Shown: piece by piece, positions 34,491-58,375 of the stretch
Layout of the letters: every line of letters begins with the position of its first letter
How positions within the stretch are numbered: the first letter of the stretch is position 1
Origin: Octopus bimaculoides
Taxonomy: Eukaryota
Length of the DNA stretch: 64,000 nucleotides
Direction: 5' to 3'
Assembly: GCF_001194135.2 (NCBI RefSeq)
Contig: NC_069005.1
Span: forward strand, 34,642,504-34,706,503
Notes under the pieces: generated by a model
The model's input: only the letters and a program-made list of their open reading frames with translations
Database searches by the model: none
What the model was told of the DNA's origin: nothing
Program-made: the position numbers and the translations under genes

Positions 34491-37400
34491 CTGGAAAGTA
34501 AAGAAAACATTGGATATAATGACAGAATTAAGAATCAAAAGACATCTTACCATAATACACCACACACACACCTTAAACAACATAACCAACACACACACAC
34601 ACACAGTGTTCCCACAATGCAACACTACACATCACCTTATGCAATATAACCCTATCCACAATGTAGCTGTGGTTTGAAGAAATACTTGTCAAGCTATACA
34701 CAATGCCTCCAAATCTAGACACACACACACATACACATGCACAATGTAGGAGGCACTTGCATATGTGCTTAGGAAATCTGAGTTATTTCAATGAATATAT
34801 GTTTAAATGATTGGTTTTAAAATAAATTTATGTTCATTCAATCCTTTAATAGATTCAGGATTTGAAAATAAAGTGCACTCACCAAAGTCACAAGAACGGT
34901 GGAATCCCTGAACACAGTGCGGATGAGGTCCTGAATGGTTTCCTCCATCAAGGCATCATCGTTGGTGTGTTCCTGCTCCACTATAACTATTTTACTGTCT
35001 CTCATATAAGCTCGAGCAAAACAGAAAAGCTATAAAAAAAAAAACAAGGATTACATATATTTAAGTCACCCGTATAATGAGGAATCAAACACAATGACTG
35101 TACAAGGTTGGTTTTGAACATGCGATCTTGTGGTCAATTATTTAATCTAACACCTTCATGTAATAAACATTGGCTAAAGGAACTGAACAATTAAAACATC
35201 TGAAAATCTCACCTGTCTCTGTCCAATAGTAAATTCCTTGCCTTCATGGAGGACAACAGTTTCTGTGGAGAGAAATATCACTGGTAAAAATAACCATATA
35301 AACGATAATTTCAACTGTTTGGGGTAACACAAATTACAAGCTACATCTGACAGTGTTTAGGGTAACACAGTTTAGAGGCTGGAGATAAGTGTTTGAGATA
35401 ACACAGATTATGCTGTAAGCTAGAATAAAGGTTGACCTGGGGCTAAACAACAACAGCAGATGTAAGCTTCCCTGTCTACCTTTGGCTTAATGTCCAAATT
35501 AATGAGATTCCTCTGAGTAACGAACTGCTGACTGAGACAAGTAACAGGAAACCCTCCAGACTGTGTTACATTCAATCAGCATATTTAAGTGTCAAAGTAG
35601 TTTAAAATGTCTTCTCAGAGAGCTTAAGCAAGTTAATCAGCTGTTGAAAGTACATGTAAGATCAGTTTGGAGTTTACCTATGAAGGTCAGTTTGACATTA
35701 TATATAACAAAAGGAAGGTGTGTGTGATCAGCATTATTGAAGAGTCAAGCAAAGGCAATCCTAAAAATACAACATCTCTATCAACATACCCAGTTTATGG
35801 GGAAGCTCTTGAACTGTGCTTTTCATTTGAACTGCATTCAAAGCTTCCCAAATCTCTGGATCTTTATATATGCCTTCTGGATCAAGATTGAACCTGAAAA
35901 ACAAAACATTTCTGGCATCAGCATTAACTAACTCTCTTTATGTTTGCTTGGTTTTAGTTTAATACAGGTTCACTTGATATACAAATTCATAGATTTACAC
36001 AAGTTGTTCAAACAGATATTTTAATAAAATTTGATAATGCTTGTTGAGTTTGGAATAATCTAGATTTGAAATGATGAATGAGAAACTCACCTGACTGTTC
36101 CGTCAAACATGATTGGGTCGTGGGGTACAATGGAAAGACGAGATCTCAGAACTTGGGACGGCACAACTGATATGTCCTGATAGTTTATCAAGATCTTTCC
36201 TTCATGTACATGGATCATCTTGAATAAGGATAAGATGAGAGATGATCGCCCACTCCCAGCATGTCCACAGAAGGCCACCTTGAAATATAGAAAAAACAAC
36301 AAACTGCTGTGTAACTGGCAGCAACAGAAGGAATACAAACAACCACTGTCACCCTGACTAACCACCTCTAGACTAATCATCATCACAACATTAACATTAC
36401 TAAATATAACCATCAGCATCTTCAGCATCACTCCACCTTTACATAACATACACAAACAAACAAAAGAGCTGCTGTGTGGTCACGTGACCAGCTTGGTAGG
36501 GTAATGTCACATGATCATGTGACTGACCAGATTATCAAATGTTGTTATACATCACTGGTCACAATGCACTTTGCACTTTGTTTTAGCTTTCGAATTATGC
36601 CACCCTGCTTGCTAGGTGAATGGGCCAACATTCCTCGTGATCGGAAGGCTCGTCCATCATGGGGTTATTCATTTACTGTTGTATAGACTAGAGCAATATG
36701 AAATGAAGTGTTCCCAATCCGGGAATCGAACCCACTATCTAGCAATTGTAAGTGCAACACCCTAACCACTGGGTCACACACCCTCACAGATATGGTCATA
36801 TAATCTTCTTGAAATGACACATTACCATCAAGACATACATTGTTTCTGAAAAGAAAAGACAGATGGTTGCAGGTGGAATGTTTTTGATCAAAAGTATGTT
36901 TGACCAGGAATATATATATATATATCATATCCCACAATATTACCAAACAAAGCTTTAAGCTATCCACCATCTTTATAGTAAGTCCTTCTCTACCAGTTTT
37001 TGCTAGATGTATGGAAAGGGATCACTCCCAAAAATATGATCAGTTATTACCACAGTGTAAGTCTGCAATTAACCACCTCTACCATTACCATCACAAACAA
37101 CAAGATTTGTTACCTTTTCCGCATCTTTTATAGTAAAAGTGGCATCCATAACGACGGGGCTCTGTTCAGGATCATAGTTTAAGGCAATGTGTTGAAATTC
37201 AATGTCACCAACATCTGGCCAAGACTCAGGGACCTCAATGCAATCTGTAATATAAAGACAAAAGCAAAATAACATTTTAGAATGAAGGCAAGAATGAAGA
37301 ACTGTAATTTTAAAAAAATACATAATTACTCTATTTGTTTGGCTAAATATAGTTAAAATAGCATTTCTACTTTACAAACAATAATTTAGGGAGAGAAAAT

Positions 37401-40400
37401 GATCAGCACACTTTTGCATTCTGAGTTCAAATCCATCTCATGTTCACTGTAATCATCATTCTTCCGGGGTCAATAAAATAACTGCAGATTGATATAATTC
37501 ACTGTTCTCTTTTCCGAATTGTTTGTCTATGAATGAGTTAGAAATTACTATTTTTCACTGTCTACGTCCATCTTGTCTTTATTGTCAGGCATTAAATTGA
37601 ACATTAAATATGTACAGACAGTTTGGAATTACTGAAATGAGATCTGACCGTTATGTTGAAGCACTGATCAGGTTCCAGAGCTACTTAGAAACTCTGACAT
37701 TAATTCAAGCAGAGACTTGCCAAACATTTCAAGACATTACCAGCAGCAATGTATAGAGCTGTAGGATGGCAATCAATGGTACAAGACTTCAATAAATTTT
37801 CAAACAGACAGTAAAAATGATGACACACCTGGTGGATCTACTGAAGGTGGTGTCTCACAAGCATATTCCACAACCCTCTCTAAAGACGAGATGTTGTTCT
37901 CTAGTTCTGTTGCATGACGTGCTATCATGTTCACATAAATTGGCATCTGAAATAGATAAAAATTCTACAGTGCAATGAGGGAAAAATACATCAATATTAC
38001 TTCACAGATGTACAGTAAAATAATGATAAAACCATCCAAGAAATTTCTCTACTCAAGAAGAGAACCAAAGAAATATGAATTAGCATGTATATATATTATA
38101 CAGGTCGTATATAAAGGTTTTACAGAAGAGTATTGGCTCAGCTGCCCTGAAAATTCCAGCATTTATCTCCAGATTAATGTTGGGCATCATAATGACATCA
38201 GTCACATTGTTTCTGATTTCCAATTTACATTCAGAATAGACAGTGATGTTTTGTATTTTGGTCAGTGAAAAGTTTAAGATTTCTCTAAGAACTAATATTT
38301 CATTCCCTGCATCACTATCCAGTCAGAATGCAAGAGGTTAATATTGGAAATCTGATATTAAATCCCTTTTTAATTATTCAATCAGAAACTGGATGCCAGT
38401 GTTGCATATGTGAATCAGTTACACAATTCTCCAATGCAGGTATTGTTTATCAGAAATATATAAGAGCTGACCAGTCCAGCTGGAAGGGGAATTTCAGAGA
38501 CGACTTGTAGGGGTCAGCAAAACTAACAAAGGAAATGTGAGCCTGTGATTCTACCAAAACATGAAGAAATCCTCAAATTCTACTTACCATGAGAACATTC
38601 AACATACAGAGTCCAACTAATGTGCCATTTTCTTCGTTTTGGATGGAGAAAGCCAAGCTACCAAGTGATGCCAGTAATAAAATAAGGCATCCAAGGAAAT
38701 CCTGCAATAAGAAGTTCTTGTTAGAACAAGTTAACCATTTAAGTGGACAGAAACATTATTCTGGGAAGCTTATAACCATTGTTATTACAACTGCTGAATG
38801 TGATCGACTGGCAGAATTGTTAGCACCATGGCAAAGATACATTGAGACAGTTGTTCAGACACTTTACATTCTTAGATTTAATAAAGTAAAAGATCAGTTA
38901 AGGCTGGGGTCAACTTGATTCACTTATGCCCCCAACCCACAAAAATTGCTGGCCTAATGTTGAAATTAGAAAGAGTAACACTTACCAAACGTATGGCTAA
39001 CCACCGATTCACAGCATGAATGTACAGGAAGACAACATTGAATACGTTTATTGCATGGGTGACATAACCAGTAAACCAGTACTGTACCCTGAAAATAGAA
39101 TTTAAAAACAGGCAACTACAAGTCATGTGTTCTATCAGTTGTTTGACACTGAGATACTAAAAATTAGGGACTCAACTAATTTTTAGTTTTAATTACCGTT
39201 GCATAATCATTTACACCACTCTCCCTAATTTGACTTCAGTAATTTTTAGGTTTTTGAGAGGAGAGCTAACTTACCTTGTTATTCCACTTCAAGAAAAATA
39301 CAGGTTATGATCATGTATTTTGATATATGAATGGTAAAGGACTGGCGAAATAACTAATTAATTAAATAAAAAATTAGTAATAAGCTGATAAATTAAATTA
39401 GTTGTGACAAAAATGAATAATGGAAAACATTCAATATACCTGTAAGCTCTAATTGTCCGAAGTCCACTAAGAATTTCTGAGAAATGGTTAAAAAGAGGCA
39501 GTTTGGTAAGATTCTGAAGACGATTGAGCTGTCTATAAAATAGAAGAGAAATAATTTGCTGTAGAGAGTAGATTAATGAAAACTAGAATACTTTACCAAC
39601 TCCACACACGTTGGTTTGTGTGTGTCAGTTACACTCTACTTTGCTGACAAAGTATATTCTACTCTACCTGTGTAAACTGTGGGTATGGGAGTATGATATC
39701 ACATATATACAATAATCTATACCCTTCTCATTTTCCCCATTTGTCTCTGCTGACGGAATAACCCAGAAACAGCTGTAAGACTGAATTTTTTTCCAATAAT
39801 AATAATGTATATGACTCGAGATGTTTGCCTTGTCTTAACGTTTGTTTTCCTATAGATACTGAGAGGTAATATTTATCTTTACTTAAACAAGGATGTCCTG
39901 TTACAATAAACTATAGAGCAATAAATACTACAAGAGAAACTCTCATATTGACTTTTGGTGCAAAAGGAACTCTTGTTTCTATCCCTAGTGATGTAAACAA
40001 CATTCATCATCATCATCATCATCATCGTTTAACGTCCGCCTTCCATCTTTCTCTATTATTCTTAATTGTACATCGAACACTTTAGCCGTACTCCATCCAC
40101 TTTCACTATTTCACATTTCCTCTACTCTTCATGTTTCCTCTTCGCTTTATATTTACAAAAAACTTGTTTGCAAAATAGTCACTCCTATTTTTTTACTATA
40201 AAGTCTGTCAAGTACATTAATTATTCAGCAAATACAGAGAGCAAAACTTATGGAAAGCCACTTTTAATTTAATGTAGTCCGTTCCTATACATACACACAA
40301 ACACACACACACACACACAAGCATCTACCATGCATAAACAAGCCTTGTTTGACAGGAAAGCATTAAGAAAACAGGAAAAGACTAACCTGATGGAAGGTCG

Positions 40401-43400
40401 GTAAAATTTGAAGAGCAGATAAAAGAGTATTATTATAGGAACAGTGGCCAGTACAAAATAGGGCATGGCTATAGAACAGATGACCAACACTATGATTGCT
40501 TGTAGTAAGAACCTCAACAATAACTCTATGGTTGTTGGTAGGATCTGAAATAAACAGGATAGAAGTGGATATAAAATGGTATGTAAAAGTACAAAATTAT
40601 GGTGGTGCTCTAGCATGACCACAGCTACATGGCTGAAATGATTAAAAGCATATGTGTGTGTGTGAGTATACAATCAGTGTACTGAAAAGATGCTCTTGAT
40701 CAAGCACAAACAGGACATCTACTCCTTCAGTCCAGGGCAAAACTCTGAGTAGACTCAATTTTGATATAATGAACACGCAGACATACACAAAGAGAGACAT
40801 ATCAATGCAGTATTCTATGGCCAGATTCCCTTCCTGATGCCAGTTGTTACTTATATCCCAATAAATAAGTTACTTATTCCACTGGAATCTGAATGGATGG
40901 ATGAATACAAAAATCTCTCAAGTGCTTTGCGGTCAATGCCTATAGAGAGAAGCAAATGTTCATTTTCTTCATTTTGCATCCATTTTGCTGTAGTGGACAG
41001 GTTGGAGAGGTAATGTCATTTTTGACCACAGTATTTTATTATAACCAGATGATCTTCATTGCTTACCATTTTTTGTTTTACAGATAAGAAAGTTTTCATT
41101 CCATTATTTCAAGAGCACAGTTATTGCATGAAATATTCACCAGAAACGTAAGTACATAAACAACATATTTTTTTACCCACGCAATCTCAAGCAGAAATGA
41201 CAACTTTCTGCTGTACGCGTGCATACATACAGATGTAAACATAATCACAAACACATATTACCCAGTGCCTCTGCATATCTTGTGAGAAAATGGATCTATA
41301 ACTAGAATGACCCTTTCCAAGGTGCAGACGTAGATAAGGTTCGGAACACCAACCGCTTCCCATGGCACCAATGCTGAGGGAGAGAGAGAAGTGAGTGGAG
41401 GCATGCTCAGCTGACCAACACCACAGACACTCAAAACATTGAACTTACCTGGTCAACAATACGACTGTCGGCTGAGAATGTATTGAGAATAGTGGCAGGT
41501 GGTGTTGACTCAAAGTGACTGAAACAGAAAATAAAACAGTCAAGCACTCACTTATTGAATGTTGTAGTTAACAGGTAACATCAATCAGTTCTGGTCAAGA
41601 TACACTTAGCACATGCTACAAGCCTTAGTTTATACTTTTAAGACATGGATTTCCCCCTGGCCTACTTAATATCCAAACATACATACAGTAGGCATATAGG
41701 CCCATAACATATACTTGTCAAACCTTCACTCACCAACACACCACAATCACACGGATACACTATATCCTCTCGCTGCCTTTTATACTGCAACTACAACAGC
41801 TCCTGCTCACAGGAACTAAAAAGCTATCTATCAAAACTGTTTCACTTACATCACAGGTAAACTGGTCAAATAGTGAAGCATCTTCTGATGAAGTCGGTCA
41901 GCTCCTCTCACTGTAGTGAACTTTAGTAATAGACCAGTCAACACTGTGACTGCCACACAGCTTAAACAGATGACCATATATAAACCAATATAGTAGGTGT
42001 GGTTGACAGGTGTGAGCTGCAGACAGAGAAGAAAACAAAGGATCAACATTGTTACATTTTATGTGTGATTAGACTGTAGAAGATTGTCACCAGAAATCAA
42101 ATTTATATTTAGTGTGAAAGGGATAGACCCAAGAAGTGGGATGAAGTGGTGTGAAAGGCTCTTGAGACACTGGGCCTCACTGAGGAAATGACATGGGACC
42201 AGGAGTTGAGGTGATTTGCTGAACTTGAGAAGATGTGTCCAGTTAAGAAGAATCATGGTCATCCATACATACAGGCATGTCTTTTGCAAGTGCCAGTGCC
42301 ACATGATGTACACATGATTGAAAGGTGAAAAGAGAAAAACAAAAAAACCACCTACCTTTGGACTGGTGATGGAATTATTCTGATGTATTTCATAATGCAC
42401 AGAGTGTTTTGAGTACATCCAGTTAGCAAGCCAAAGATCAGAGGTGACGATTAAAGTGTGTTTGCACAAAAGGAGTATCACCAATAATAGAACCAGTGAA
42501 GAGGAGCAGAGTTTCAGGAATTCAAAACACATGCCAGTGGAGATTGAACCAAGGTCACGCAGATCCAGTTTTAATGATGGACTTTCTTCTTCTTCATTGT
42601 CCTCTATCAGATAACAAACAGACATCATCATCATCATATACACACACACACACATTACATAAATAGCTTTTTTTTTAGTAATACTTACTTTTACTTTTCC
42701 ATTACATGCAAACCATGTGTGTATGTATACACATACATACATACATACATGCATAAACAAACAGACTATCTACACACATGTGTACACAAATTATGAGTTA
42801 ACCTTCAATATTATATCAATATCAAAATTAATTCCAGAAAATACTTTTCCAAAATATTTAGAGAGAAAGAAAGAAACATTAAAGATTACAGAGAAATCTT
42901 AGAGATATTCTGTAAAAGAATTGCAGATTGAGAGAAATGAATCCACACAGATTCTCCTTTGTAACACAGCAGCAATGGTGGATTTATTATCACCTTCGCC
43001 TTAGCGAAGGCAGATGTATTGTTTGCAGTCGCATTTGTTTGTTTGTCTGTGGACAAAATATCTCAAGAACCACTGGATGGAATCGGATGAAATTTTCAGG
43101 GATGTTTGGCCTTGGGATTGGCATGAACTGATTAGATCTTGGGATCAATCCGGTACCGGACAAGGATTCTGGATTATTTTACCACTTTTTTTACTTAATT
43201 TTTGAGAGCAGCTGCATTCATTTTTAGTATTCCCGTTTGTGAGAGCAGTGAAGTTTATTTCAGATATTCTTATTTTAAAAATCATCTCCGGCTAATTGTT
43301 GAGAGGACATTGGTGTTGCCTTGGCGGGGATTTGCGCTCTCTAAGTGCTCTTGTTAATTTTGATTTGTAATTAATAAGTTGTCAGAACAGATCCATTACA

Positions 43401-46400
43401 TTCTTTAAAATGAAATCATTTAGGATTCATCTTCTTAAGTTGCTACTTTGGTCAGGTGCATGTCTCAGGTAAACAATTGATAAAGAACAGGTGGAAGAGT
43501 AGAACTAAGGAGAAACGGGTTTCCTGACTCTGTAACCGCAACTACAACCACATGCTGGGCAAAATGCTTAGCAGCATTCCATCCGTCTTTACATTCCAAG
43601 TTCAAATTCTGGCAAAGCCAACTTTGCCTTTCGTCCTTTCAGGGTCAATAAAGTAAGTACCAGCTGAGTACTGGAGGGGGGGGGGGTCAATGTAATCAAC
43701 TTACCCACTTCTCTGAAATTACTGTGTGTGTGTGTGTGTGTGTGTGTAAAATCTACAGCTCTGAATCAACTGTCAACCTTCTCCTTATATTCAGACCAGC
43801 TCAATCTTCACTCTTGCACATTGCATCTGATTCCTCTGAGACAAGTTCTTTTTTTTTTTCCCTTCGGTTCAGTTGTATTATTTAAACACTGGGAAAAAGA
43901 CATCTCTTCCGACCAGAAATGTAATGTTTCTTTCCAGACAGACAAGTTTGTCAACTCTACTAGTGTCCATAAGAGAGGGACAACTAAAGAGCGTTAATAT
44001 TCTGAAAGAGAATAAATAGCACGTGTGTGTGTGTGTGATATGCATTAATGTGGCAGAAAAGAAGAAGGTGCATTAGTTTTGCATAAGTGTTTAAGCAGAG
44101 ATTTAACATGTGGTATACAATACAGGACGGTGCATCACTTGCAACTCTTCTACAGTGTACTACATGAAAAATACTACATATTTATATTGACTACCAGTAA
44201 TAGTAGTGATAGTAGCAGTGGTAACAATAGCGAGGAGGGGAGGGTAGGAGGAGCCAGTGCAGAATACTTTACGTTCATAACATGTCTCCTTTGTGTAGTC
44301 ATCAAGGGGAAGTAAATCATCTGAAAAAAGGTGACAGTTTAGAAGTGATACAGTCCAACCGTTCGGTAGTAAATACGGGCATTAACTTACCTCATAACAA
44401 GATTCCATTTACAGAATTAACTGTTTCTGCTAAACAATTCTGGTTCTGGTCACCCCTCTCCCCTCTTTAAAAATGCTCACTATATACATAATATATACAC
44501 ACAACATTATTTATATACATAATATATACACACAATATTATTTATATATATATATAAACTAGCAGTCCATCAGTTAGGACAATGAGTGTTCCAGTGGATC
44601 CAATCAACAGAGCAGCCTGCTAATGAAATTAACATGCAAATGGCTGAGTGCTCCACAGACACACATACCCTCAATTCTCTCAAAAATATAAATGAACTTT
44701 AAATAACTGCCATGACACTGACAACAATGCTGTAATTGTTACACAATAAATACTTTAAAAACGAAACTCTAGCTTTCTCGTCACTGTAGCAAAGAAGGAA
44801 CTGCTGACAGGTGGACGGTCAGCTTTCTCGTTCTGACTAAGTCCTTGGAAATTGGTTTATTGTATAAAAGAGTCGACAAAGACATGGGTGCATGCATAAA
44901 GGCATTCATTATGCTTGCACAAAACACATGCAAACACAGGGAAACATTCACAGATGATGATTGTGTTCATGCAAATATAGAAACCAGAAATAAACATGCA
45001 TGTGGACCCATACACACAGACACAGAACACAGGTATATACAAATCTACATACAGCCATACAAACAAACATACAAGCATACAGCTGAAATTGCTAAAAAAA
45101 ATATTTAGCGTTTCTACATCAGACTTAAAACATTAAACTGTTTTCTGCAGAAAATACATGAAAATCAAATAAAATCATATTCTAAAAATATATAGTCTCC
45201 ATGAAGTGTGCGTGTGGTGTATGGCAGTACCATATTTCTTCAAATAGGTAACAGTAAAGAGTAAAAACTCCCACCTCCTTTAGTCATGAATGACCATGGA
45301 ATGGCACCTAGAAAGTTCCCCTCCAAGGCACAAGTCCAAGCAAGGTTGTTTCTGGAAGACCAGCAGTAGCCCATGCATACCAACCCACCCTCTCCACACC
45401 ACCAATGTTATCCAAGGGAATGACAAAGAGCGATACAGCTTGGCACCAGTGATATCGCATCGCATTTTTACAGCTGAGTGAACTGGAGCAAAGTGAAATA
45501 AAGTGTCTTGCTCAAGAGTACAATATACAACCCGGTCTAGGAATTGAACTCACTACCTCATGATTGTGAGCCTGACACTCTAACCACTGAGCCATGTGTC
45601 TTCAAATACAGGTAGAATATATCACAAGTTTTTTTACCCAGGTGGGCGATGGAGCATTTTTTGGCCAATAGGTAGGCAATATTGCAATTTGGCACAAAAG
45701 GTTTAAGAAACACTGCTTTAGGGTCTGGAACTGTAAAATAATTCAGATCACATCTAGCACACACACACACACACATTATATATTCAAGATGTTGTTAGTG
45801 TAGGGTGTTCCAGACAACATTAGTGACTCCGTCTACAGATGTGTCACACCAACTCAGCGATGAAACATCTATGTGGCCACTCAACTACCTGGAAGCAGGA
45901 GCCAAATCTCCCTCAGATCACAGTCAACTATCTTGAAACACATTAGATGTTGTAGTGCCAAGATACATTGTGGCTGAATAAAAGACAAAACGGTCACAGT
46001 TAGATCACATTTTTGTATCATTTGTTGGATTAAGGGGTGGGATTAGTGGGGGATAAACAGCACTCACATTATACTACATCCTACCATCATAACACCACAA
46101 CCAGATATACACACACATATAATTGTGACTTTAATGTTAGACAAGATACTTACCTTCTTCCAATCCATCATCCTCAAGACTATTTTCTGTCATTACAGAC
46201 ATCTGTGATACCTGACGACTAATTGGTATCCCAAGGTTTGACTGAAACACAAATATATATACCAGTAATATACAGGGGTTTAAACACACAACACACAGGA
46301 AATTCATTTGCAAGTTCAGTGAACCTACGACTAAAGATGACCTTAAATGTGTCCTTTTTTTAATATTATAAAATGTTAAGGAAGACTTAGCTACTATTTC

Positions 46401-48905: not shown

Positions 48906-51872
48906 TGAAAATAGTTTCATTCACTGAAAGTTCTGGCCTTCCCTGTTGTTATTGAGTCTCTTGTTACTGTTTTGTTATTTAAAACAACTTCAAGAACCTC
49001 AGAGAAACAAGAAATCTTGAGTAGCAACAGGATGGAGTTCAAGATCCAAATGAATTGCTTAAACTTTATGCTTACTAAATACTTTTCTCTCTTCTTTGTA
49101 CACCCATACATATAACAAAGTGTGTGTGTGTATCTTATATGTCACTGGTCTCTTCATGTGTAAAGAAGATGTCCATTTATAGCTCTTCAGCCTTTTAAAA
49201 TGGTTCTTCTCAATTTTGTAAAGTAGGGACAGCGAGCACCCACTCACTCCCATCTTCTGCCTCTCACTGGGATATGAGAATGAATACACAGCTACTCACA
49301 TTGAAAGGTACACATACATACTCCCTACCAAACCAACTACAATAACTCTTTCCTAGGCATTACAACCAAAAAAAAAAGAGAAAAAGAAAAAAGAAAAAAA
49401 CAATGGAACAAGTTCCCCTGAGAAACAAAGACAAACTTTTCAGAATTCAATGCCACAATTAGTATCTGTTATGACTGTACATAGATTTACCAAAACAATT
49501 ATAGATGCAGCTAAAAATATATTCATTAAGGCAATACAAGACATACAACTCTGATTACAAGACTGAAACCGTCAAACTGATAATGAACGGAGACAACCCC
49601 AGACACTAAAACCAGAAATGTAGATATATATATATATATATATATAAATTTAAATACTAAGGGTGAAAAATTGAGTATTAATTTAATTAATATCAATTTA
49701 AAACCAGTGGCCTAGCATATTGAAAAATCTGAAGATTCAGAAAAATTATATTACATACATATACGAGGGATGACCACTAAGTGGACATCCATTATGCTAG
49801 AAGACCACCTATGGTCTGACCATTAAGAAGAGATTGTTCTCAAGAAAAAGTATAGTTCCAAAGTTACCAATCACATGCAGCAGGTAACACTCTTGTTTTG
49901 CTGTGTTATGAAAGAGACATCAATAGATTAATCAAAGTGTGATTACATTAGTTTCTAAAATATCTGTGAAAACTGAAACTTCAATGAATCAACAAAAGAA
50001 GGAAATGACACAATATTTGTATTGACTAATGAGTGATGGATGAATATGACAAAAGAGTGAATATTGAAGATAACAGATGCTTTGGGTGAGGTGTAAAAGT
50101 GATATATGAGAGTGGACACCTCAACAAAGAGTTACAACCCCAGGCCATTTCAGTTTTTCAGTTTATATCATACTAAACATAAGTAGACAAAAAGCATGCC
50201 CTACTGCCCCTCAGGTCACCCAATACATGCACTGCACAGTCCAGAGTATTGAGCAGCATTTATAACAAAAAATGCAAGACAGAAGTAAAACCCAGTGACT
50301 TAGATATACTCAGGTTGTGTGAGAGAGAGAGAGAGAGATCGGTTCATGAGAGAAAGAAAGAAATGTGAATACCTGGTTGGTATGTGAGAGAGAAAGAATG
50401 AGTGAAACAGGACATACTAATGACCAAAATTCCAGAAAAGATAATAGAAACAGGAAACAGAAAAATACCTTTCTGGAAGACTTGATCTCCTCCTGGGGCA
50501 ACAAAATAAAAACAATAGCTTCATTACTGATATTTAACATGTTGTAACATGCTATTTAAGGTGATTAGAATAAATCATAGCTACATGTGATATGTTGTAA
50601 TAGACTCTTAAGTTTTTCATTATTTATTCTTGTACAAGTACTTAGACCAGATCCTCAGTTTCAACAACCGACACAACAACCACATTAGTGTAGGAAGACC
50701 TTCAAAGTCATAGCTGAGAATGACAGATCATAACATACATTGAGAGGTCATAGCAAGCGAAGCGATAAGATGTATTGACAAGGCACGGAAGACCACGACA
50801 GGTTACAACAGATCACAGGCAGTCATTGCAAACTAAAGAGATGTTGAGAGGTCATGGCACACAATGAGAAGTGACAGCAGGTCATCAGAGGTGATGACAG
50901 GCCATAGCAGACCACTGCAGGTCATAAAAGATGAAACTGACCCGGAAATAGTTAGAAGGTACTCCTCATTTGATTCCTATGCTGCAAAACCATAGACGTA
51001 GAGAGAGAGAGTATTTCACAACATGACATATAAGAGTACCTCAGTACCCAATATACAGAGAGTACCTAAAAAAGAAAAAAAGGATCAAGTGTCGTTCCTG
51101 AGCCATAAGCTCAAGGCCAGTTTCCCAGAATCTGTGGTGTATACACCCACCCTAGATGGGACACCAGCCCACTTTAGGATTGCTCACTTTTGCCAAATGA
51201 GGGGACTGGAACAACATGAAATGAAATGTTTTTGCTTGCCCAGTCCAGAAATTGAAACCACAATCTTATAATCATGAGTGTAACACCCTAACCACTAAGC
51301 CATGCACCACCACAGAGAGTACCCAAGTACATGACATAGAAAGAACCTCAGTAGACAATAAATAGAGGATTCCACAACAACAAAGATGGTACCTCACTAC
51401 AAAACAGGCAGAACCTTACAAAAGGATACAGAGTTCTTCATTACACAACACAAAGTAAAATTGACAACAAGATATAGGGTACGTCACTACAAGACATACA
51501 AGCAGCACTACATGGTACAGAGTACCTCAAGACAGACAGTATAGTACCTCACTGCAAGATATAGAGTACCATGCCAAAAAAAAAACCTGATGATAGTTCA
51601 TTATAAGGCATGCAGTACCACATAATAAAACATACAAAGTACCTTATTATGAAATTTAGAGTACTGCAAGGAAGACATGACTTTATTACAAGACATATGG
51701 AACCATGCTATCAGACAGTCATGCAGTACTGCACAAGACAGAGACAAACTACTCTTGCTACTACTAATAACACTACTGATCAATACTTACTGATACTTTT
51801 GAAAAAATATCAATATGTATTGAGTACTTCACTACAAGATCTTGTTCTGAAATATATAAAACCAAGCTGTAT

Positions 51873-51903
<31 letters not shown>

Positions 51904-52591
51904 TATTTTGCAACATCCAGCTCACATACATACACATGCACACACAATACTCTACAGATACTGACAATATTTTACTACATCACATACATACACACACTCA
52001 CAGTATACAGCTACAGGACAAGGACATGACCACATGACATCAATATATAAAAATCTATCAAAAAATACCTTTCAACCACATTAGTTCTTCTGGAAATAAA
52101 ATTGATATAATAATGGAAGTTAGAAGATAAAGTAAAACTGATTAATTATTATAATTTATGTGTTCTTGACAATGATGATGATGATGTCGATAATTATTTA
52201 GGATTTAGGCCATCAATTACAAGGAGAGGGATGGTCAATTCCATCAATGAAGGGATTAAGCAATTATATCAACCCCATTTCTTCACTAGGACTTTATTTT
52301 ATTGGCTCCCAAAAGAATGAAAGACAAAATCAACCTCAGTGGAATTTGAACTTACATTGTACAGAACCAGAACGAATATCACACAGTAGTTTCTTTTTTC
52401 TCACAGTCTAACAATGCTGCCACTCCACTACTATCACTACCGACATTGACCCCAGTATGCGACTGGTACCTTATTTTATTGTCTGCAGAAGGATGGACGA
52501 CAAGGCAGACTTTGGCAGGATTCAAGCTCAGAACACAAAATGTCGGATTAAATGCCACTAAGCCTGTTGTACTAACAACAATTCTACCACC

Positions 52592-52628
<37 letters not shown>

Positions 52629-53941
52629 TCTACTAAAGGCACAAGGTGTAACTGGTACTTATTTCATCGACCCCCAAAAGGATAAAAAGCAAAGTCAACC
52701 TCAGTGGAATCTGAACTCAGAACATAAAGATGGACTAACCACATGGTTCCGGCATGGTACCTAGGCCAAGTGTCTTCTACTATAGTCTTGGGCTGACCAA
52801 AACCATATGAGTGGATTTGATAGACAGAAACTGAAAGAAGCCCATTTATATATATATATATGTATGTATGTATTTGTGTATCTGTGCTTGTTCTCCCACC
52901 ATTGCTTGACAGCCAATGTGTTACATTCCCGTAACTTAGCGGTTCAGCAAAATAAACCGATAGAATAAATACTAGGCTTACAAAGAATAAGTCCTGGGGT
53001 TGATTTGTTCGACTAGAGGCGGTGCTCCAGCATGGCCGCAGTCAAATGACTGAAACAAGTAAAAGAATATATACATTATTCAGACAACATAAATACCAGA
53101 AAATATTTGACTCCAATACAGATTTCTGGCAGCCATCTCGACGAGTTCAAATATAGACAGAAGGCCATGAAGTTGGGGAGAGGGCTAGCATTTACTTTAT
53201 ATACCCTGAACAAATATTAAAGATGTGCATCGCATAATTAATATAATGGCTGTAAATGGGATTAGTGAATGTCAAAGTAGAAGACACACCAAACAGAGTA
53301 AGGGAGACTACTCGATATTGATGAAGGGAGGTAACTTGGTCTAAACAGACGTAAGTGGTCTATGTGTGACAGGGGCGGCTAATGTTGGCTAACTATACGG
53401 GGAACGAAGGAGGGTTAACACTATGTGAGGCTTCTCGGGAGACTTGTAATAATATGTGGGAGAGGGATAACATATTGTGGGTTAACACTTCATTCAAACA
53501 TTATATGGTTTGACCAACTCCTCCATTTATGTGAAGTTAATAAAACACTTAATGATTTCATGGGTTAACCCCACATCAATTATCTGGGTTAACATGACAT
53601 TCAATTATTTTAGCTTCTACAACAATAAAATAGGTTAATATCAAACACGTAATGGTTGTTACAATACAAAAAAATCAAGTGGGATAACATAAAATGTAGG
53701 CATGACGAGAATAATCTAACCCAGATGTGGAGTGTAAAGGGGCTAACACTTACTTGTTATCCTTCAGTACCCTTCTCCAGCTTTCATAGAGATCAGGGTC
53801 AGCACGCTTTATGTCCTTCAATCTTCCCTGACATTTGATTTGGTGACGATTCACAACAATTATCTGCAGAGAAACAAAACATGTATTACTATTGTGTGGG
53901 GGGAGGGGGGTTTAGAAATTACTATCGTGTGTAAATATATG

Positions 53942-53978
<37 letters not shown>

Positions 53979-56900
53979 GACACAAATTACAGAAATATTT
54001 AGATGACATTATATATTAAAGAAAATTCTAATTTCACGACAAATTGTTTCGTAACTTAAAAACATGTAAATAATTTATATCATATTTAATATTTAATAAT
54101 AAATAAGTTACACCCAAACAAATACCCACACACATTTATACAACATGGTAACATCAACAAAAATAATGTAAAACAATGTCTGTGAAAGGAACTGACCTGA
54201 TAAGCATTGTAGATGTGAGGAATTTGTGGAGAGACAAGGATAACTGTACGTTTTCTTCTGATCATGCTGCGTACCACTGCCTCCTCAAAAACATTGCGTC
54301 CAAGGTGAGGCTCTATCTTGGAGAATGGATCATCCTGGGAACAAAACATGTTTAAAGTTCAAATCTTGTTTGAAACAACTTTTCTTTATTTCCACCCTTG
54401 GGAAAATGAAACTGACTTAGGCCTACAATGTGTTTTTTTTTTTAATATTTAAGTTAAAGGAGGGGATAGGCAGTATCCATGACCCTTTTTAGAGCTTTCA
54501 TGACCAGTTGGATGGGGGAGAGGGCTTAACCTTCAGACCAGACATTTTGTTAGAATGCTTACAACAAAGATGACACCTGTAAAGAACAGCCAAGGACCAG
54601 GTGCTGGGGTTAAACTTGCAGATGGATTGATGATGATGATGATGTGAGTTGTTAAGTTCAACTCAATCTTTAACCCCCTAAACTAGAAATGGTAGCAGCC
54701 AGTAAATGGAATAACTGGAAGAGTCCATGTAAAGAAGGTGGGTAGATTATGCTTACCATAATAATTGTGTTTGCTGAGGAATAGAGGGCTCTCGCAAGAG
54801 AGATACGCTGTTTCTGACCCTCTGTCAGTAAGATACCCTGAAAATAGAGACAAAGTCAAAAGTAGTAATTAGAATGGTGATGCTGTTGTTGTTTGGTTGG
54901 TTGAGCCAGTTCATACTTCTCACTTGCATCATCTTTATCTTCTGATAATATCTTTTGTGCCGTAAACCATTTACTATCAAAGGAAGGAAGGGTACCCCCT
55001 TCTTTCCCTTAATGTCCTAAACACGTGCTTATTTTGCTTAATGGATAATCTAGCGCTGGTGGAGACCCATTTTCTACTCTCGACAGACCAAATTATTCTA
55101 TGGTAGCATCTCTTCATTGGCTGAACACTCAAAGTACAGCTCTAAATATAACGATAATGAGAGGATTGACTCGTTAACCTACCTGTTCACCAACTTCTGT
55201 CCGATCTTTGGCCGGCCACAAAGTCAGGTCCGTGTTCAGAGAAACAGCATGGAGTACTTTTTTATATCTGTAATAAGTAACAAATACTTTATAGAGACAC
55301 ACACACAGATACCACCCAATACATTATGTACACACACCACCACTGCCACTGCCACCCAATTCGGTCCTCAATTCCTTATGGTTATCCATAGTACTTAATA
55401 ATGAAGGTCTTCTCCATCATTTACGGTTTCTTTGATGAACATACATCCCAAACTGTTGTTTAATTTCATATTCTCCAAAGTTGATGTACCAATCTTGTCT
55501 CTTTCAGCAGCAGGAAAACACAAATGCCAATCACAGCAAGGAAACAGCACTGCAGCACACACACACACACACACACAGAGTTTCATAAAACATATTCAAG
55601 AAACACTTACTTTCTATAATTGTATGGTTGACCAAAAAGTATGTTTTCTTGGACTGTGGCATTCATGAGCCAAGGTGGTTGCGAACAATATGCCAATGTA
55701 CAGGCTCTGTAAGGAAACAGATTAATCGATCAGTTATAATAACAACTAAGAATGATATTAGTGAAAGAGGTTGTTGTGTTAACTTTACTGTTAGTGACTA
55801 CGAATGGATAGCAAATTGTTGCAATAAAACTGTAAGATGAAGATGATGATGAAAACATATATACACACAGAGACAGAGAAACATACCTGTTCCACTCCAT
55901 GACTCCAGAATCCAAGACCATTTCCCCCAACATGGCTGATAACAATGTTGATTTGCCTGACCCAGAGGGACCAGTTATTATTGTCATCTTACCTACAGAA
56001 TAGAACAACAACAGTAGTAGTAGTAGCAGCAGCAGCATGTGGTGGTGCCTACAGTAGTGATGGCACCAGAGACTACCAAATATCTCCAACATCACCATCT
56101 GTGTCCAAGTGAAGCAATATCATTCACATCCTTCACCACCCGTCCCCCATGCAAACCCTCAAATATTCTTAAAAGGTTAACCTTTCACATCACTAACCCA
56201 TGCATTCTCCTCTCCAAATTAGAGAGAGAAAGAGAAAGATAAAAGGCAGAAATACTAGGAGTTATATACATAACTTTCAAAGGCGTGGCTGTATGGTAAG
56301 TAGTTTGCTTCCCAACCACATGGTTCCAGGTTCAATCCCACTGCGTGACACCTTGTCATGCATATCTACGTGTGTATACCTTTGTGTCTGTGTTTGTGGG
56401 CCCCCACAGAAACATAGCATAACTGAGATGAAGGCCCTGTTGGTCATTTGGCCTGAATGCTATGCGACGACTGCCCAAACCGAGCTAACCTGGACCAACA
56501 CAACCACCACCATTACTACACTTTGCTGCCAAAAGTGATGACGAAGAAGAAATTTTGCAATAATATAAAAAATATGAGGGACGAACTTCTAGAAACTAAG
56601 ATGCAGTTAGAGGTGAGGAGAGTAGAGATGCTGAAAGAACTTACCCAGGGGGATTTTAATGTTGATATCTTTCAAACAGGAAGATTCATCGGAGAGGTCC
56701 GTAGAGAAAGAAGCCTCGGAGATGTCAAGGGCAAGCCGGTGTTCCACGGTCGGAGCGGCTTCTGCTGCTTCTCCCTCATCTTCCATGATAGAGACGTTGC
56801 CGTTGGTATTTCGTCGACGATAATGAAACCCTCGTCTTTCGGCGATGTAGGTGTCGTTTTCAGAAGTGATTGAGTGCTGTGAAAAGCTCGGCCGACGAAA

Positions 56901-58375
56901 GGCAGGGTCAAGGATGTCCAGCACAGATGCCCCGCTGTTCTGCCGGCTGTGGTTTGGAGTGTGACCCAGGGGGGGACTACTCTCCACTGATGAGATACTT
57001 CCACGCATCGCTCCATTGTGGAACGCCATGCTAAGCTGGTTGGTTTTTACATCATACTTCATCAGAGTGTCCAGCTTGTTCTAACAACAACAACAACATC
57101 AGTAAGAGTGACATCACAACACACACACACACACACACACACACCACAAAGAAGAAAGTGAAGGAGACGAAATAGGAGATCTCGAAACGTTTATAAAGAG
57201 TAGCAGCAAGAGGAAATGTAAAAGTTGAGGGTGTACAAAGAGTAGCAGTAAGAGGAGATATTATAATTGAAGGTGTACAGGAGGATTAGTTGAGGGTGTA
57301 AAAAGAGTAACAGTTGAGGGTGTAGAAAGAGTAGCAGTAAGAGGAAACATGACAACTGAAGGTGTACAGAAAGTAGAAATAACAGAATATGTAAGAGTTG
57401 AAGGTGTACAAAAAGTAGCAGTAAGAGGAGATGTAACAGTTAAAGGTGTAGAGAGAGTAGCAGTAAGAGGAGATGTAACAGCTGAAGGTGTACAAAAAGT
57501 AGCAGTAAGAGATATGTTATAATTGAAGGTGTAGAGAGAGCAGCAGTAAGAGATCTGTCTGGAAGAGTGGCAGTGATGTTTTTCCAAACTTACTAACATG
57601 GGTGGAATTGATTTTGAAAATTCAGACATTTCTGCATCACTGGATCTTGAGTCCATCACCAGCAGAGTAGGAGTGGAACCTGTTGTCAGCCATGTGGACT
57701 AATTTGGTTTACAGAGGAGAAAATATCTGTAGCCCCCCTACACTACCAACTCCTGCAGAATAATGTGCCGTGCAGCCCACCTACATTGTAGGACCATAGT
57801 GTACCATGTGGTCCACATACAATAGGACATAGTGTACCATATGGTCTACAAAGAGGTGCTAAAACGCTCCTGGCTTTAAGGGCATCGTGAAAGGCCTGGT
57901 TAAAAGCCCAATCTTCCGACTTCTTTTACAGGGCTTAGAAAGACTAAAGGACTGCTGTAATAAGTATGAGAATCTGAGAGGGGAATACGCTGAATAAAAT
58001 TATAATTAACTGATCCTCCTGCATTTTCTTTTACCCAATAGGTACAGTAGGATGTACTGTATGACGTGGTTGAACTATCATAGAACAGACTGTACCATGT
58101 GGACCACCAGCACACCACAGTCCACCACGTGGTCCATTTTACTAGAGGACATTGGGTACAATATCCTCCTTATAAACAGAAGATTGAGTAAACAGAAAAC
58201 TAAATATATTTCACAGCAGCAGTCAGGGAACCATGAGTGTGTAAAGCACAGGCAGCAGGATTATAATAGCATGAAACTATTGGTAGCTCTTTCGGTGGTG
58301 TATTTAAATTCATATTTATCTCTCACTGGAGGGAGTACTTTTTTTCTTGACCTTACCTCTATCGGATCTGTAAAC

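What the first reader, a model, noticed from the sequence alone, without database searches (positions are those of the whole stretch)
34883..57080. SUR-like ABCC with both composite ATP sites degenerate: a candidate natural pseudo-ATPase
Seen in sequence, aligned by eye to SUR2. NBD2: Walker A GHAGSGRSS (invariant K>R, CGA at 36246-36248); Q-loop IVPHDP (Q>H, 36120-36122); Walker B IVIVEQ instead of ILIMDE (D>E, and catalytic E>Q at 34973-34975); D-loop TNDD. NBD1: signature LTEGQ instead of LSGGQ (54814-54828); A-loop FST instead of FSW (56700-56702); D-loop SKIE; H-loop VSPQ instead of VTHK. Established knowledge: ABCC proteins normally keep one consensus site (NBD2 Walker A/B plus NBD1 LSGGQ), and E>Q is the standard hydrolysis-dead mutation (CFTR E1371Q, MRP1 E1454Q). 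Here both halves of that consensus site are altered, yet ~1520 codons over 35 exons stay open with intact splice sites. Inference: this is a conserved non-hydrolysing SUR-like protein acting as a scaffold, ligand sensor or channel regulator. Kir6, the vertebrate SUR partner, is not known in molluscs, so the partner is an open question.
Basis: partly seen in the sequence, partly recalled or inferred. Interest (0 to 1): 0.85.

Follow-up and report, generated by a model that had tools for sequence, protein, structure and literature searches.

The report
Octopus SUR with a dismantled ATPase site
The window holds most of the Octopus bimaculoides version of the sulfonylurea receptor, a channel-regulating ABC protein. 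In octopuses, cuttlefish and squid-like relatives its one normally working ATP-splitting site was rebuilt long ago and then kept unchanged, so it most likely works without splitting ATP.

Summary
In detail: every motif codon sits at the stated coordinates on the minus strand. The gene is Octopus bimaculoides "ABCC9". My spliced model is 1484/1485 identical to the RefSeq isoforms XP_014770068, XP_014770071 and XP_014770072.

It is the single mollusc SUR orthologue. PDB matches score 925 bits to SUR2B against 558 to MRP1, and an NJ tree places it in the mollusc SUR clade with 100% bootstrap.

The NBD2 changes (Walker A K>R, Q-loop Q>H, Walker B D>E, catalytic E>Q) and the NBD1 signature LTEGQ are shared by three Octopus species, Argonauta and two decapodiform mRNAs. 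They are absent from 19 gastropod and bivalve SURs and from the 149 closest ABCC cluster representatives.

Replacements at ultra-conserved positions concentrate in consensus-site motifs: 13 of 23 positions against 16 of 106 elsewhere (p=8e-5). Of the 29 replaced positions, 26 are invariant among coleoids.

dN/dS is 0.086 overall and 0.079 in NBD2, so this is not a pseudogene. A-to-I editing cannot restore the canonical residues.

The most likely reading is a non-hydrolysing regulatory subunit. Loss of ATPase activity and the partner are inferred, not shown. The stated span is too narrow: the gene runs from 34320 to 63928 and off the window.

The parts
34320..63928 (-). In-window part of the Octopus bimaculoides SUR orthologue (RefSeq 'ABCC9'). 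It has 32 constitutive or major exons and codes residues 297-1808 of isoform X1. The gene continues 5' beyond coordinate 64000, where TMD0 and L0 are encoded.
   Evidence: tblastn with P0001 followed by GT/AG refinement. All 31 introns are GT-AG with polypyrimidine tracts. The model is 1484/1485 identical to XP_014770068/71/72. The acceptor AG is at 63930-63929.
59075..63928 (-). TMD1 exons (exons 1-7)
   Evidence: Aligns to SUR2 TMD1. Coordinates.
56739..59074 (-). Insert of about 155 residues before NBD1. It includes the optional exon 8 (58757-58683) and an alternative donor that adds VQKEAE (59026-59009). It is rich in RRxS/RGS motifs. Gastropods and bivalves have it; vertebrate SUR does not.
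53754..56738 (-). NBD1 exons. A-loop FST (Thr 56700-56702). Walker A GPSGSGKST, intact (55972-55946). Q-loop SQ, intact (55690-55670). Signature LTEGQ (54828-54814). Walker B plus D-loop IIMDDPFSKIE (54765-54311, split by an intron). H-loop VSPQ (54235-54224).
52068..52088 (-). 21-nt cassette micro-exon coding RTNVVER, in the NBD1-TMD2 linker
   Evidence: Exact peptide match with AG and GT flanks. It is present or absent in different RefSeq isoforms, and equivalents occur in decapodiform mRNA contigs.
50471..50491 (-). 21-nt cassette micro-exon coding RRSSLPE, a basophilic-kinase consensus
48684..48704 (-). 21-nt cassette micro-exon coding RSSLAER
   Evidence: The same peptide is found in the mRNA contig P0151.
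42545..46664 (-). Constitutive linker exons 16-18 and the start of exon 19, coding RRTSF...SQMSVMTENSLEDD
37240..42544 (-). TMD2 exons (19-27). The pocket residues that align with human SUR1 N1244, R1245 and R1299 are kept. S1237 is Phe and W1296 is Met.
34320..37239 (-). NBD2 exons (27-32). A-loop NYD, Tyr intact (37182-37168). Walker A GHAGSGRSS (36266-36240). Q-loop VPHDP (36128-36114). Signature FTIGQ (35233-35219). Walker B plus D-loop IVIVEQEHTNDD (34990-34955). H-loop TLHHL, His kept (34888-34482, across an intron). The stop codon follows 34320.

Best explanation
The locus is the Octopus bimaculoides orthologue of the sulfonylurea receptor (ABCC8/ABCC9 family), and it is expressed and under strong constraint.

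On the stem lineage of coleoid cephalopods, the only catalytically competent ATP site of this protein was rebuilt. That site (site 2) is made of the NBD2 Walker A, Q-loop, Walker B and H-loop region together with the NBD1 signature. The new residues were then frozen.

The protein keeps the full SUR architecture, and its TMD0, which in vertebrates holds the Kir6 pore subunit, evolves at the normal mollusc rate.

The most likely mechanism has four parts:
- It no longer hydrolyses ATP at any useful rate.
- It serves as a non-enzymatic regulatory subunit of an ion channel, with TMD0/L0 holding the partner.
- Site 1, and probably the remodelled site 2, bind nucleotide as ligand or structural glue rather than substrate.
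- Control has shifted towards phosphorylation of the RRxS-rich insert and linker, whose content is tuned by alternative 21-nt micro-exons.

Shown here: identity, orthology, the motif changes, their age, purifying selection, and splicing.

Inferred: loss of hydrolysis, retained nucleotide binding, the channel partner, and control by phosphorylation.
For: **Identity**
- The spliced model is 99.9% identical to the O. bimaculoides ABCC9 isoforms.

**SUR orthology**
- PDB phmmer gives 925 bits to SUR2B, 913 to SUR1, 558 to MRP1 and 377 to CFTR. TMD0 alone scores 228 bits against SUR2.
- An NJ tree puts the coleoid clade (100% bootstrap) inside the mollusc SUR clade (100%), on a long stem branch.

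**Motifs**
- Five coleoid sequences share GHAGSGRSS, [VI]PHD, IVIVEQEHTN[DE]D and LTEGQ.
- All 19 gastropod and bivalve SURs are canonical. So are the brachiopod, echinoderm, hemichordate, amphioxus, arthropod and vertebrate SURs.
- The 149 best non-coleoid representatives from an exhaustive HMMER scan of 1.84 billion proteins are also canonical.

**Targeted remodelling**
- Coleoids replace 13 of 23 ultra-conserved site-2 motif positions, against 16 of 106 elsewhere (p=8e-5). In site-1 motifs only 1 of 14 is replaced.

**Constraint**
- dN/dS between O. bimaculoides and O. sinensis is 0.086 overall (97 synonymous and 31 non-synonymous differences), 0.079 in NBD2 and 0.064 in NBD1.
- Against Argonauta, pN/pS is 0.117 overall and 0.070 in NBD2.
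- NBD2 is the most conserved domain between octopus and cuttlefish, at 87%.
- The altered residues keep the same amino acid through synonymous codon changes: CGA, CGG, AGA and AGG; GAG and GAA; CAG and CAA.
- In contrast, the NBD1 A-loop position (T, M or K) and H-loop position (P, S or T) drift freely.

**TMD0**
- TMD0 identity to other molluscs is 0.50-0.57, the same as the gastropod-bivalve baseline. TMD1, TMD2 and both NBDs are 0.13-0.19 lower than baseline.

**Splicing and expression**
- Full-length intronless mRNA contigs exist for the decapodiforms.
- The RRSS micro-exon cassettes are used in different combinations in RefSeq isoforms and in mRNA contigs.

**Context**
- Human SUR1 turns over only about 0.02 ATP per second, and KATP gating is not coupled to hydrolysis (PMC5790381). 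Losing catalysis is therefore a small functional step for a SUR.
Against: - No biochemical data exist. E>Q mutants of ABC exporters often keep some residual ATPase (my own knowledge).
- An unusual extra Glu follows the Gln (VEQE, where 39 of 39 other ABCCs have Ala). It could in principle act as a shifted base.
- Walker A K>R and Walker B D>E may also weaken Mg-nucleotide binding. That binding is the actual sensor function of vertebrate SUR, so "binds but does not hydrolyse" is not assured.
- No partner is identified.
   - No Kir-like ORF lies in the 34 kb downstream of the gene in the window.
   - None lies within 10 kb in Argonauta or Pecten.
- Octopus expression rests on RefSeq models that I could not check against reads.
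- In decapodiforms the Arg codon (AGA/AGG) was seen only in mRNA. An edited AAA/AAG cannot be excluded there, but three octopod genomes encode CGA/CGG.
Confidence: 0.6

Rival explanations
1. Nucleotide-blind scaffold. Site 2 no longer binds nucleotide at all. NBD2 is kept only as a structural or protein-docking module, and the NBDs are either permanently apart or permanently latched by the new side chains (for example the NBD1 signature Glu against the NBD2 Arg and His residues). The protein would then be a constitutive auxiliary subunit with no metabolic sensing.
For: - Four Mg or phosphate ligands changed together: K>R, Q>H, D>E and E>Q. A Glu was also introduced into the signature that faces the gamma-phosphate.
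- The flanking conserved residues R1594, T1595, A1722, T1723 and R1753 also changed, mostly to His or Glu. This looks like a re-packed pocket.
- Coupling-helix motifs in TMD1 and TMD2 are altered as well: G491T, D500E, G1334A and R1339T.
Against: - The P-loop glycines, the Ser after the Arg, the A-loop Tyr and the H-loop His of NBD2 are all retained and invariant across coleoids. That is what retained nucleotide binding would predict.
- K>R keeps the positive charge.
Confidence: 0.25
2. It is still an ATPase or transporter. Catalysis is kept through non-canonical chemistry, for example Glu1722 (the residue after the Gln) acting as a shifted general base with Arg replacing Lys, and the protein still cycles or transports.
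For: - An acidic residue appears at the +1 position only in coleoids and is invariant there.
- Strong constraint on NBD2 would also fit an active enzyme.
Against: - All four residues whose single mutation is the standard way to kill ABC hydrolysis are changed at once.
- None of the 149 nearest ABCC representatives tolerates any one of the K, D or E changes.
- SURs are not known to transport anything, and vertebrate SUR is already a very slow ATPase.
Confidence: 0.1
3. The gene is a decaying copy or pseudogene, or the motifs are assembly errors, or they are corrected in the mRNA by A-to-I editing.
For: - The window comes from a gapped assembly: 12 runs of N, 4569 bases in total.
- Coleoids edit mRNA heavily (my own knowledge).
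Against: - 1484 codons are open across 32 exons, all with GT-AG splice sites.
- dN/dS is 0.086.
- The same residues are encoded in three independent octopod genome assemblies (O. bimaculoides, O. sinensis, Argonauta) and in decapodiform mRNAs. The O. vulgaris proteins fall in the same 90% cluster.
- None of the needed reversions is an A-to-G change.
- The only run of N inside the gene is 10 bases, in an intron (61810-61819).
Confidence: 0.02

Closest known systems
Vertebrate sulfonylurea receptors SUR1 (ABCC8) and SUR2A/B (ABCC9), the regulatory subunits of KATP channels
   Same: - It has the same TMD0-L0-TMD1-NBD1-TMD2-NBD2 architecture.
- These are its best PDB matches over all domains (925 and 913 bits), including TMD0.
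- NBD2 aligns without gaps.
- NBD1 has the ABCC-type degenerate Walker B (D-D).
- The central-cavity residues equivalent to N1244, R1245 and R1299 are conserved.
   Different: - The consensus site is dismantled: K>R, Q>H, D>E, E>Q and LSGGQ>LTEGQ.
- The NBD1 A-loop Trp and H-loop His are lost.
- There is an insert of about 155 residues before NBD1 and a longer linker with alternative micro-exons.
- No Kir gene is adjacent, whereas ABCC8-KCNJ11 and ABCC9-KCNJ8 are neighbours in vertebrates (my own knowledge).
Gastropod, bivalve and brachiopod SUR orthologues (e.g. Aplysia, Biomphalaria, Pecten, Mytilus and Lingula 'ABCC9')
   Same: - They form the same orthologous clade (100% bootstrap).
- The molluscs share the pre-NBD1 insert with its HSRQNS...GAS and RRRxxS...EDE motifs. 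The gastropods also share the S-QMS-VMTE linker motif.
- TMD0 conservation is similar.
   Different: - All of them keep the canonical GRTGSGK[ST]S, IPQD, DEATAS, AHR and LSGGQ motifs.
- The coleoid ABC core is 0.13-0.19 less identical to them than they are to each other.
Engineered hydrolysis-dead ABCC proteins (CFTR E1371Q, bovine MRP1 E1454Q)
   Same: They carry the same Glu-to-Gln change at the catalytic base of NBD2. In those proteins it traps an ATP-bound NBD dimer (my own knowledge; MRP1 structures are listed).
   Different: - Here the change is natural and ancient.
- It comes together with Walker A K>R, Walker B D>E, Q-loop Q>H and a Glu in the partner signature. The outcome (locked dimer or no dimer) therefore cannot be read off from the single mutants.
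CFTR (ABCC7)
   Same: - It is an ABCC member that is not a transporter.
- Its NBD1 H-loop also lacks His (my own knowledge).
- It is regulated through a disordered segment rich in RRxS sites. The octopus linker and insert carry similar sites, some in alternative micro-exons.
   Different: - CFTR keeps a working consensus site that times channel closing.
- CFTR is only a distant relative of this protein (377 bits).
- The phosphorylation idea for the octopus protein is untested.

Membership tests
SUR (ABCC8/ABCC9) subfamily of ABCC proteins | TMD0-L0 followed by two TMD-NBD halves, with TMD0 of the SUR type | tested here: met
   The full-length orthologue P0001 and the isoforms of the window's own gene align to SUR2B in four stretches that cover TMD0/L0 (228 bits), TMD1, NBD1 and TMD2-NBD2. 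The window itself holds TMD1 to NBD2 only.
SUR (ABCC8/ABCC9) subfamily of ABCC proteins | Closer to SUR than to MRP or CFTR, and orthologous placement in a tree | tested here: met
   Scores are 925 and 913 bits to SUR2 and SUR1, against 558 to MRP1 and 377 to CFTR. The NJ tree gives 100% bootstrap for SUR-like against MRP, 100% for the mollusc SUR clade including coleoids, and 100% for the coleoid clade.
SUR (ABCC8/ABCC9) subfamily of ABCC proteins | One consensus (catalytically competent, MgADP-sensing) site: NBD2 Walker A Lys, Walker B Asp-Glu and Q-loop Gln, plus NBD1 LSGGQ | tested here: not met
   The coleoid sequences have R, E-Q, H and LTEGQ instead. All 35 other SUR-like sequences examined keep the NBD2 motifs. 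All that are aligned at the NBD1 signature keep the SGGQ core (first residue L, once M; one sequence is gapped there).
SUR (ABCC8/ABCC9) subfamily of ABCC proteins | Assembles with a Kir6-type pore subunit and confers sensitivity to Mg-nucleotide and sulfonylurea | not testable with these tools
   Indirect evidence only. TMD0 evolves at the baseline mollusc rate. Three drug/KNtp pocket residues are kept and two are changed. No Kir ORF lies within 34 kb downstream.
Catalytically active ABC ATPase | At least one composite site with Walker A Lys, Walker B Asp, a catalytic Glu, an H-loop His and a canonical LSGGQ from the partner domain | tested here: not met
   Site 1 has Lys and Asp present, but Asp in place of the catalytic Glu (as in all ABCCs), an H-loop of P, S or T, and a partner signature of FTIGQ or FSVGQ. 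Site 2 has Arg, Glu and Gln with the H-loop His present, and a partner signature of LTEGQ.
Pseudogene or decaying gene copy | Frame disruptions, lost splice sites, dN/dS near 1 | tested here: not met
   There are no stops in 1484 codons, and all introns are GT-AG. dN/dS is 0.086.

The most novel reading that the evidence does not exclude
Coleoid cephalopods turned a SUR into a true pseudo-ATPase whose former catalytic pocket now serves as a fixed latch. It either holds a nucleotide permanently or is filled by its own new Glu, His and Arg side chains. Metabolic (MgADP) gating would be replaced by control through phosphorylation and splicing of an R-domain-like insert and linker, with combinations of RRSS micro-exons. 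That would be CFTR-like regulatory logic built on a SUR scaffold, possibly paired with a channel that is not of the Kir6 type.
Probability: 0.15. Interest if true: 0.8.

Novelty: new variant of a known kind. Interest (0 to 1): 0.62.

Why it matters
SUR is the textbook case of an ABC protein reused as a channel regulator. Whether its ATPase activity matters for gating has long been debated. Structural work argues that it senses ADP and that gating is not coupled to hydrolysis (PMC5790381).

A SUR orthologue that lost every standard catalytic residue of its consensus site, yet was kept under strong selection across the coleoid split, is a natural experiment on that question. By my own knowledge that split is hundreds of millions of years old. 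The protein shows what a SUR can do without hydrolysis and offers a ready-made, evolution-tested "dead" variant for structural and electrophysiological work.

It also sharpens an open question: what invertebrate SURs pair with. The partner is still unclear even in arthropods (PMC12258255).

Among the 149 nearest ABCC cluster representatives, none has lost the NBD2 Walker A Lys or the Walker B Asp-Glu. I found no paper describing an ABC protein with no canonical site, or any paper on cephalopod SUR.

Tried and rejected
- **Representative search input.** I used the last 1195 residues of the O. sinensis orthologue instead.
- **First dN/dS attempt.** Whole-protein tblastn HSPs ran into introns and inflated dN. 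I replaced it with per-exon alignments. The rerun crashed on the mRNA loci but gave clean values for O. sinensis and Argonauta.
- **Argonauta signature codon.** One codon read as GGT. This was an artefact of the HSP choice made. The Argonauta genome encodes LTEGQ.
- **Conserved SUR-Kir gene neighbourhood.**
   - No Kir-like ORF lies in window 1-34300.
   - None lies within 10 kb of the gene in Argonauta or Pecten.
   - Amphioxus has a second SUR-like gene downstream instead.
   - Mizuhopecten was not on record, and O. sinensis isoform X4 was not on record either.
- **Nautilus orthologue.** I hoped one would date the change, but none appeared.
- **Literature.** Searches for cephalopod SUR or KATP, mollusc Kir6, and ABC proteins with two degenerate sites found nothing relevant.
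- **Kir6.2 protein search, not run.** The 120-row output would probably fill with vertebrate Kir6 clusters.
- **Structure prediction, not run.** The tool returns no coordinates, so it could not say anything about nucleotide binding.
- **Rejected readings.** Pseudogene, assembly error, rescue by RNA editing, and a paralogue that diverged beside a canonical copy. For the last, no second cephalopod SUR was retrieved although the more distant P0001 was. This is moderately strong evidence, limited by the word pre-filter of that search.


Full report
**What is in the window**

- Reading 34850-35150 and 36050-36350 gives the exons coding LFCFARAYMRDSKIVIVEQEHTNDD... and VAFCGHAGSGRSS...LSIVPHDPIMFDGTVR.
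- I built a crude concatenation of stop-free stretches and used it to find close homologues.
- I then mapped Octopus sinensis "ABCC9-like isoform X4" (P0001) back onto the window with tblastn and refined each junction to GT/AG.
- The result is 32 exons and 1484 in-frame codons with no stop. Every intron is GT-AG and is preceded by a polypyrimidine tract.
- The first in-window exon starts at 63928, after the AG at 63930-63929. The last ends at 34320.

The model is 1484/1485 identical to the three RefSeq isoforms of Octopus bimaculoides "ATP-binding cassette sub-family C member 9" (XP_014770068, XP_014770071 and XP_014770072). The one mismatch is my mis-called first codon. The window is therefore O. 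bimaculoides and the gene is already annotated.

The window holds residues 297-1808 of isoform X1. TMD0 and L0 lie beyond coordinate 64000. Its "35 exons, ~1520 codons" does fit the whole in-window gene once three 21-nt micro-exons are added.

**What family it belongs to**

- Against all PDB sequences, the full-length orthologue scores 925 bits to SUR2B and 913 to SUR1. It scores 558 to MRP1 and 377 to CFTR.
- The N-terminal TMD0/L0 aligns to SUR2 at 228 bits on its own.
- NBD2 aligns to SUR1 and SUR2 without any gap, so each motif residue can be equated position by position.
- With a gastropod SUR as bait I recovered SUR orthologues from ten gastropods and nine bivalves. The octopus protein followed (37% identity, 100% coverage), ahead of the deuterostome and insect SURs.
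- An NJ tree on 1477 columns and 44 sequences with 100 bootstraps gives 100% for SUR-like against MRP, 100% for a mollusc SUR clade that includes the coleoids, and 100% for the coleoid clade. The coleoid clade sits on a long stem branch.

So this is the mollusc SUR orthologue, not merely a SUR-like ABCC.

The same search returned no second cephalopod SUR, although it did return the more divergent P0001 and one octopus MRP1-like protein. This argues against a co-existing canonical paralogue, within the limits of that tool's word pre-filter.

**How unusual the motifs are**

| Motif | Coleoid sequences (5) | Other SURs |
|---|---|---|
| NBD2 Walker A | GHAGSGRSS | GRTGSGK[ST]S |
| NBD2 Q-loop | [VI]PHD | IPQD |
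| NBD2 Walker B and D-loop | IVIVEQEHTN[DE]D | hhhhDEATAS.D |
| NBD2 H-loop region | TLHHL (His kept) | IAHR. |
| NBD1 signature | LTEGQ | LSGGQ |
| NBD1 D-loop | ends in E | ends in D |
| NBD1 A-loop third position | T, M or K | W |
| NBD1 H-loop | P, S or T | H |

The five tabulated coleoid sequences are O. bimaculoides, O. sinensis, Argonauta hians, a cuttlefish-like mRNA and a second decapodiform mRNA. The O. vulgaris proteins belong to the same 90% cluster and are 97.6% identical to my model, but I did not tabulate their motifs.

All 19 gastropod and bivalve SURs are canonical. So are the SURs of Lingula, three echinoderms, a hemichordate, amphioxus, arachnids, insects and vertebrates, and a sponge ABCC9-like protein.

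An exhaustive HMMER scan of 1.84 billion cluster representatives gave the 149 nearest non-coleoid ABCCs. Every one that has an NBD2 keeps the Walker A Lys, the Walker B Asp-Glu and the H-loop His. The nearest of them are brachiopod, bivalve, gastropod, amphioxus, arachnid and sea-star proteins named ABCC8 or ABCC9.

**An unbiased scan of the remodelling**

I took the 129 alignment positions that are at least 95% conserved in 39 non-cephalopod ABCCs and asked which are replaced in all five coleoids.
- 29 are replaced, and 26 of these are invariant among coleoids.
- 13 of the 23 such positions inside site-2 motifs are replaced, against 16 of 106 elsewhere (Fisher p=8e-5). Site-2 motifs here are the NBD2 A-loop, Walker A, Q-loop, Walker B/D-loop and H-loop, plus the NBD1 signature.
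- Site-1 motifs lose only 1 of 14. NBD2 outside the motifs is not enriched (7 of 39).

The change is therefore a targeted rebuild of the consensus catalytic pocket, not general decay. A few conserved coupling-helix residues in TMD1 and TMD2 also changed (G491T, D500E, G1334A, R1339T).

"Both sites degenerate" is thus true in outcome. The novelty lies in site 2, because site 1 is the ordinary ABCC degenerate site with two further losses.

**Selection**

Per-exon codon alignments give these values.

| Comparison | Overall | NBD2 | NBD1 | TMD2 |
|---|---|---|---|---|
| O. bimaculoides vs O. sinensis (dN/dS) | 0.086 (dS 0.106; 97 synonymous, 31 non-synonymous) | 0.079 | 0.064 | 0.034 |
| O. bimaculoides vs Argonauta (pN/pS; synonymous sites saturated) | 0.117 | 0.070 | 0.067 | 0.124 |

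- Between octopus and the cuttlefish-like sequence, NBD2 is the most conserved domain (87% identity), followed by TMD0 (83%).
- At the altered catalytic positions the codons differ synonymously between lineages: Arg is CGA, CGA, CGG, AGA and AGG; Glu is GAG or GAA; Gln is CAG or CAA. The amino acid never changes.
- In contrast, the NBD1 A-loop and H-loop positions vary freely among coleoids.
- This pattern says the new site-2 residues are themselves functional. It is my main reason to prefer "binds nucleotide or forms a defined latch" over "empty relic".

**Where the cephalopod lineage sped up**

| Domain | Octopus vs gastropod or bivalve SUR (identity) | Gastropod vs bivalve baseline |
|---|---|---|
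| TMD0 | 0.50-0.57 | 0.49-0.57 |
| TMD1 | 0.31-0.37 | about 0.50 |
| TMD2 | about 0.33 | about 0.50 |
| NBD1 | 0.47-0.54 | about 0.65 |
| NBD2 | 0.42-0.46 | about 0.60 |

The part that holds the pore subunit in vertebrate KATP kept its normal rate. The ABC engine was reworked.

**Artefact, pseudogene and editing**

- Three independent octopod genome assemblies (O. bimaculoides, O. sinensis and Argonauta) encode the same residues. The decapodiform mRNA contigs show them too.
- The decapodiform sequences come from intronless contigs of 5.5-7.5 kb that carry the whole ORF, whereas the octopus gene spans more than 85 kb. They must therefore be mRNA.
- They align across all my junctions, which supports the splice model.
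- The reversions to K, Q, D and E need C>A, C>G, G>C/T and similar changes. None of these is the A>G change that A-to-I editing produces.
- One caveat: the decapodiform Arg codon AGA/AGG was seen only in mRNA.

**How it most likely works**

Vertebrate SUR1 binds MgATP at the degenerate site and MgADP at the consensus site. It turns over only about 0.02 ATP per second, and KATP gating is not coupled to hydrolysis. The protein acts as an ADP sensor (PMC5790381). Losing catalysis is therefore a modest step for a SUR.

Here, though, the residues that hold Mg and the phosphates changed as well. My best reading (confidence 0.6) is as follows:
- It is a non-hydrolysing regulatory subunit that still docks a channel through TMD0/L0.
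- Site 1 binds ATP much as in other ABCCs.
- Site 2 is a non-catalytic nucleotide pocket or latch.

A nucleotide-blind scaffold is the main rival (0.25). Retained catalysis through the odd extra Glu in VEQE is possible but unlikely (0.1). Pseudogene, artefact or editing rescue is essentially excluded (0.02).

The partner is unknown.
- No Kir-like ORF lies in the 34 kb downstream in the window, and none lies within 10 kb in Argonauta or Pecten.
- Even in arthropods the make-up of KATP channels is unresolved (PMC12258255).

**Regulatory extras**

- Molluscan SURs carry an insert of about 130-155 residues before NBD1, which vertebrate SUR lacks. It contains conserved HSRQNS...GAS and RRRxxS...EDE motifs.
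- In coleoids the NBD1-TMD2 linker contains three 21-nt cassette exons. In the window they are at 52088-52068 (RTNVVER), 50491-50471 (RRSSLPE) and 48704-48684 (RSSLAER).
- RefSeq isoforms use them in many combinations. Decapodiform mRNA contigs carry equivalents (KNVVPER and RCSLAER; KTAAPER and RSSLAER) that are present, absent or paired.
- Two of the three cassettes add an RRxS site. This suggests phosphorylation-based control tuned by splicing, a lead I did not test.

**Novelty and score**

The gene is annotated, and SURs are known non-transporters. I found no description of a SUR, or any ABCC, whose consensus site is lost by evolution and then conserved. I also found no paper on cephalopod SUR.

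I rate it a new variant of a known kind. It is of real interest to ABC-protein and KATP specialists as a natural hydrolysis-dead SUR. Two things temper the score: hydrolysis was already thought dispensable for SUR function, and the key claims need bench work.

Noticed in passing
window 52088-52068, 50491-50471, 48684-48704 (minus strand): Three 21-nt cassette micro-exons lie in the NBD1-TMD2 linker and code RTNVVER, RRSSLPE and RSSLAER. Octopus RefSeq isoforms use them in many combinations. Equivalent 7-residue cassettes appear in decapodiform mRNA contigs, so the alternative splicing is ancient. Two of the three add an RRxS kinase consensus.
   Followed up: partly
window 58757-58683 and 59026-59009 (minus strand): Exon 8 (25 residues, SSFSISRLRSVVQSAKSMFSCIDCK) is an optional cassette. 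It is seen only in Octopus isoforms and is absent in O. sinensis X10, the O. vulgaris models, Argonauta and the decapodiforms. Exon 7 has an alternative downstream donor that adds VQKEAE.
   Followed up: partly
window 56739-59074; loci of gastropod and bivalve SURs (alignment): An insert of about 130-155 residues between TMD1 and NBD1 is shared by molluscan SURs and is absent from vertebrate SUR. It carries conserved HSRQNS...GAS and RRRxxS...EDE motifs. Its function is unknown.
   Followed up: partly
P0134 (XP_029654666.1, O. sinensis, on a separate 239-kb scaffold): A 301-residue 'ABCC8-like' model consists of NBD2 only, with the same degenerate motifs. It has one residue difference from the main gene within NBD2. 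It is probably a haplotig or an assembly duplicate rather than a second gene.
   Followed up: no
window 34320-34370 (C-terminus); alignment: All coleoid proteins end in a conserved extension...RE[SG]Q..R.NKV[VL]IT[VI]S. It runs past the point where the sponge ABCC9-like sequence (P0005) ends. It could be a trafficking or docking motif.
   Followed up: no
window 20005-20328 (plus strand): A stop-free stretch has an immunoglobulin-like look (...CEAVEDCIPVINETDFRVPVNQTIVVRCQLGTCHYRFEGVTWKRHG...). It may be an exon of a neighbouring gene on the opposite strand.
   Followed up: no
window 1-32452 and 61810-61819: There are twelve runs of N, 4569 bases in all. Eleven lie downstream of the gene and one, of 10 bases, lies in an intron. 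Simple repeats (CA/TG-rich) are abundant, and the downstream 34 kb contains no convincing coding sequence.
   Followed up: partly
L005 (Branchiostoma lanceolatum, CM068854.1): Amphioxus carries two SUR-like ABCC genes in tandem on the same strand, about 2.8 kb apart. There is no Kir gene between them.
   Followed up: no
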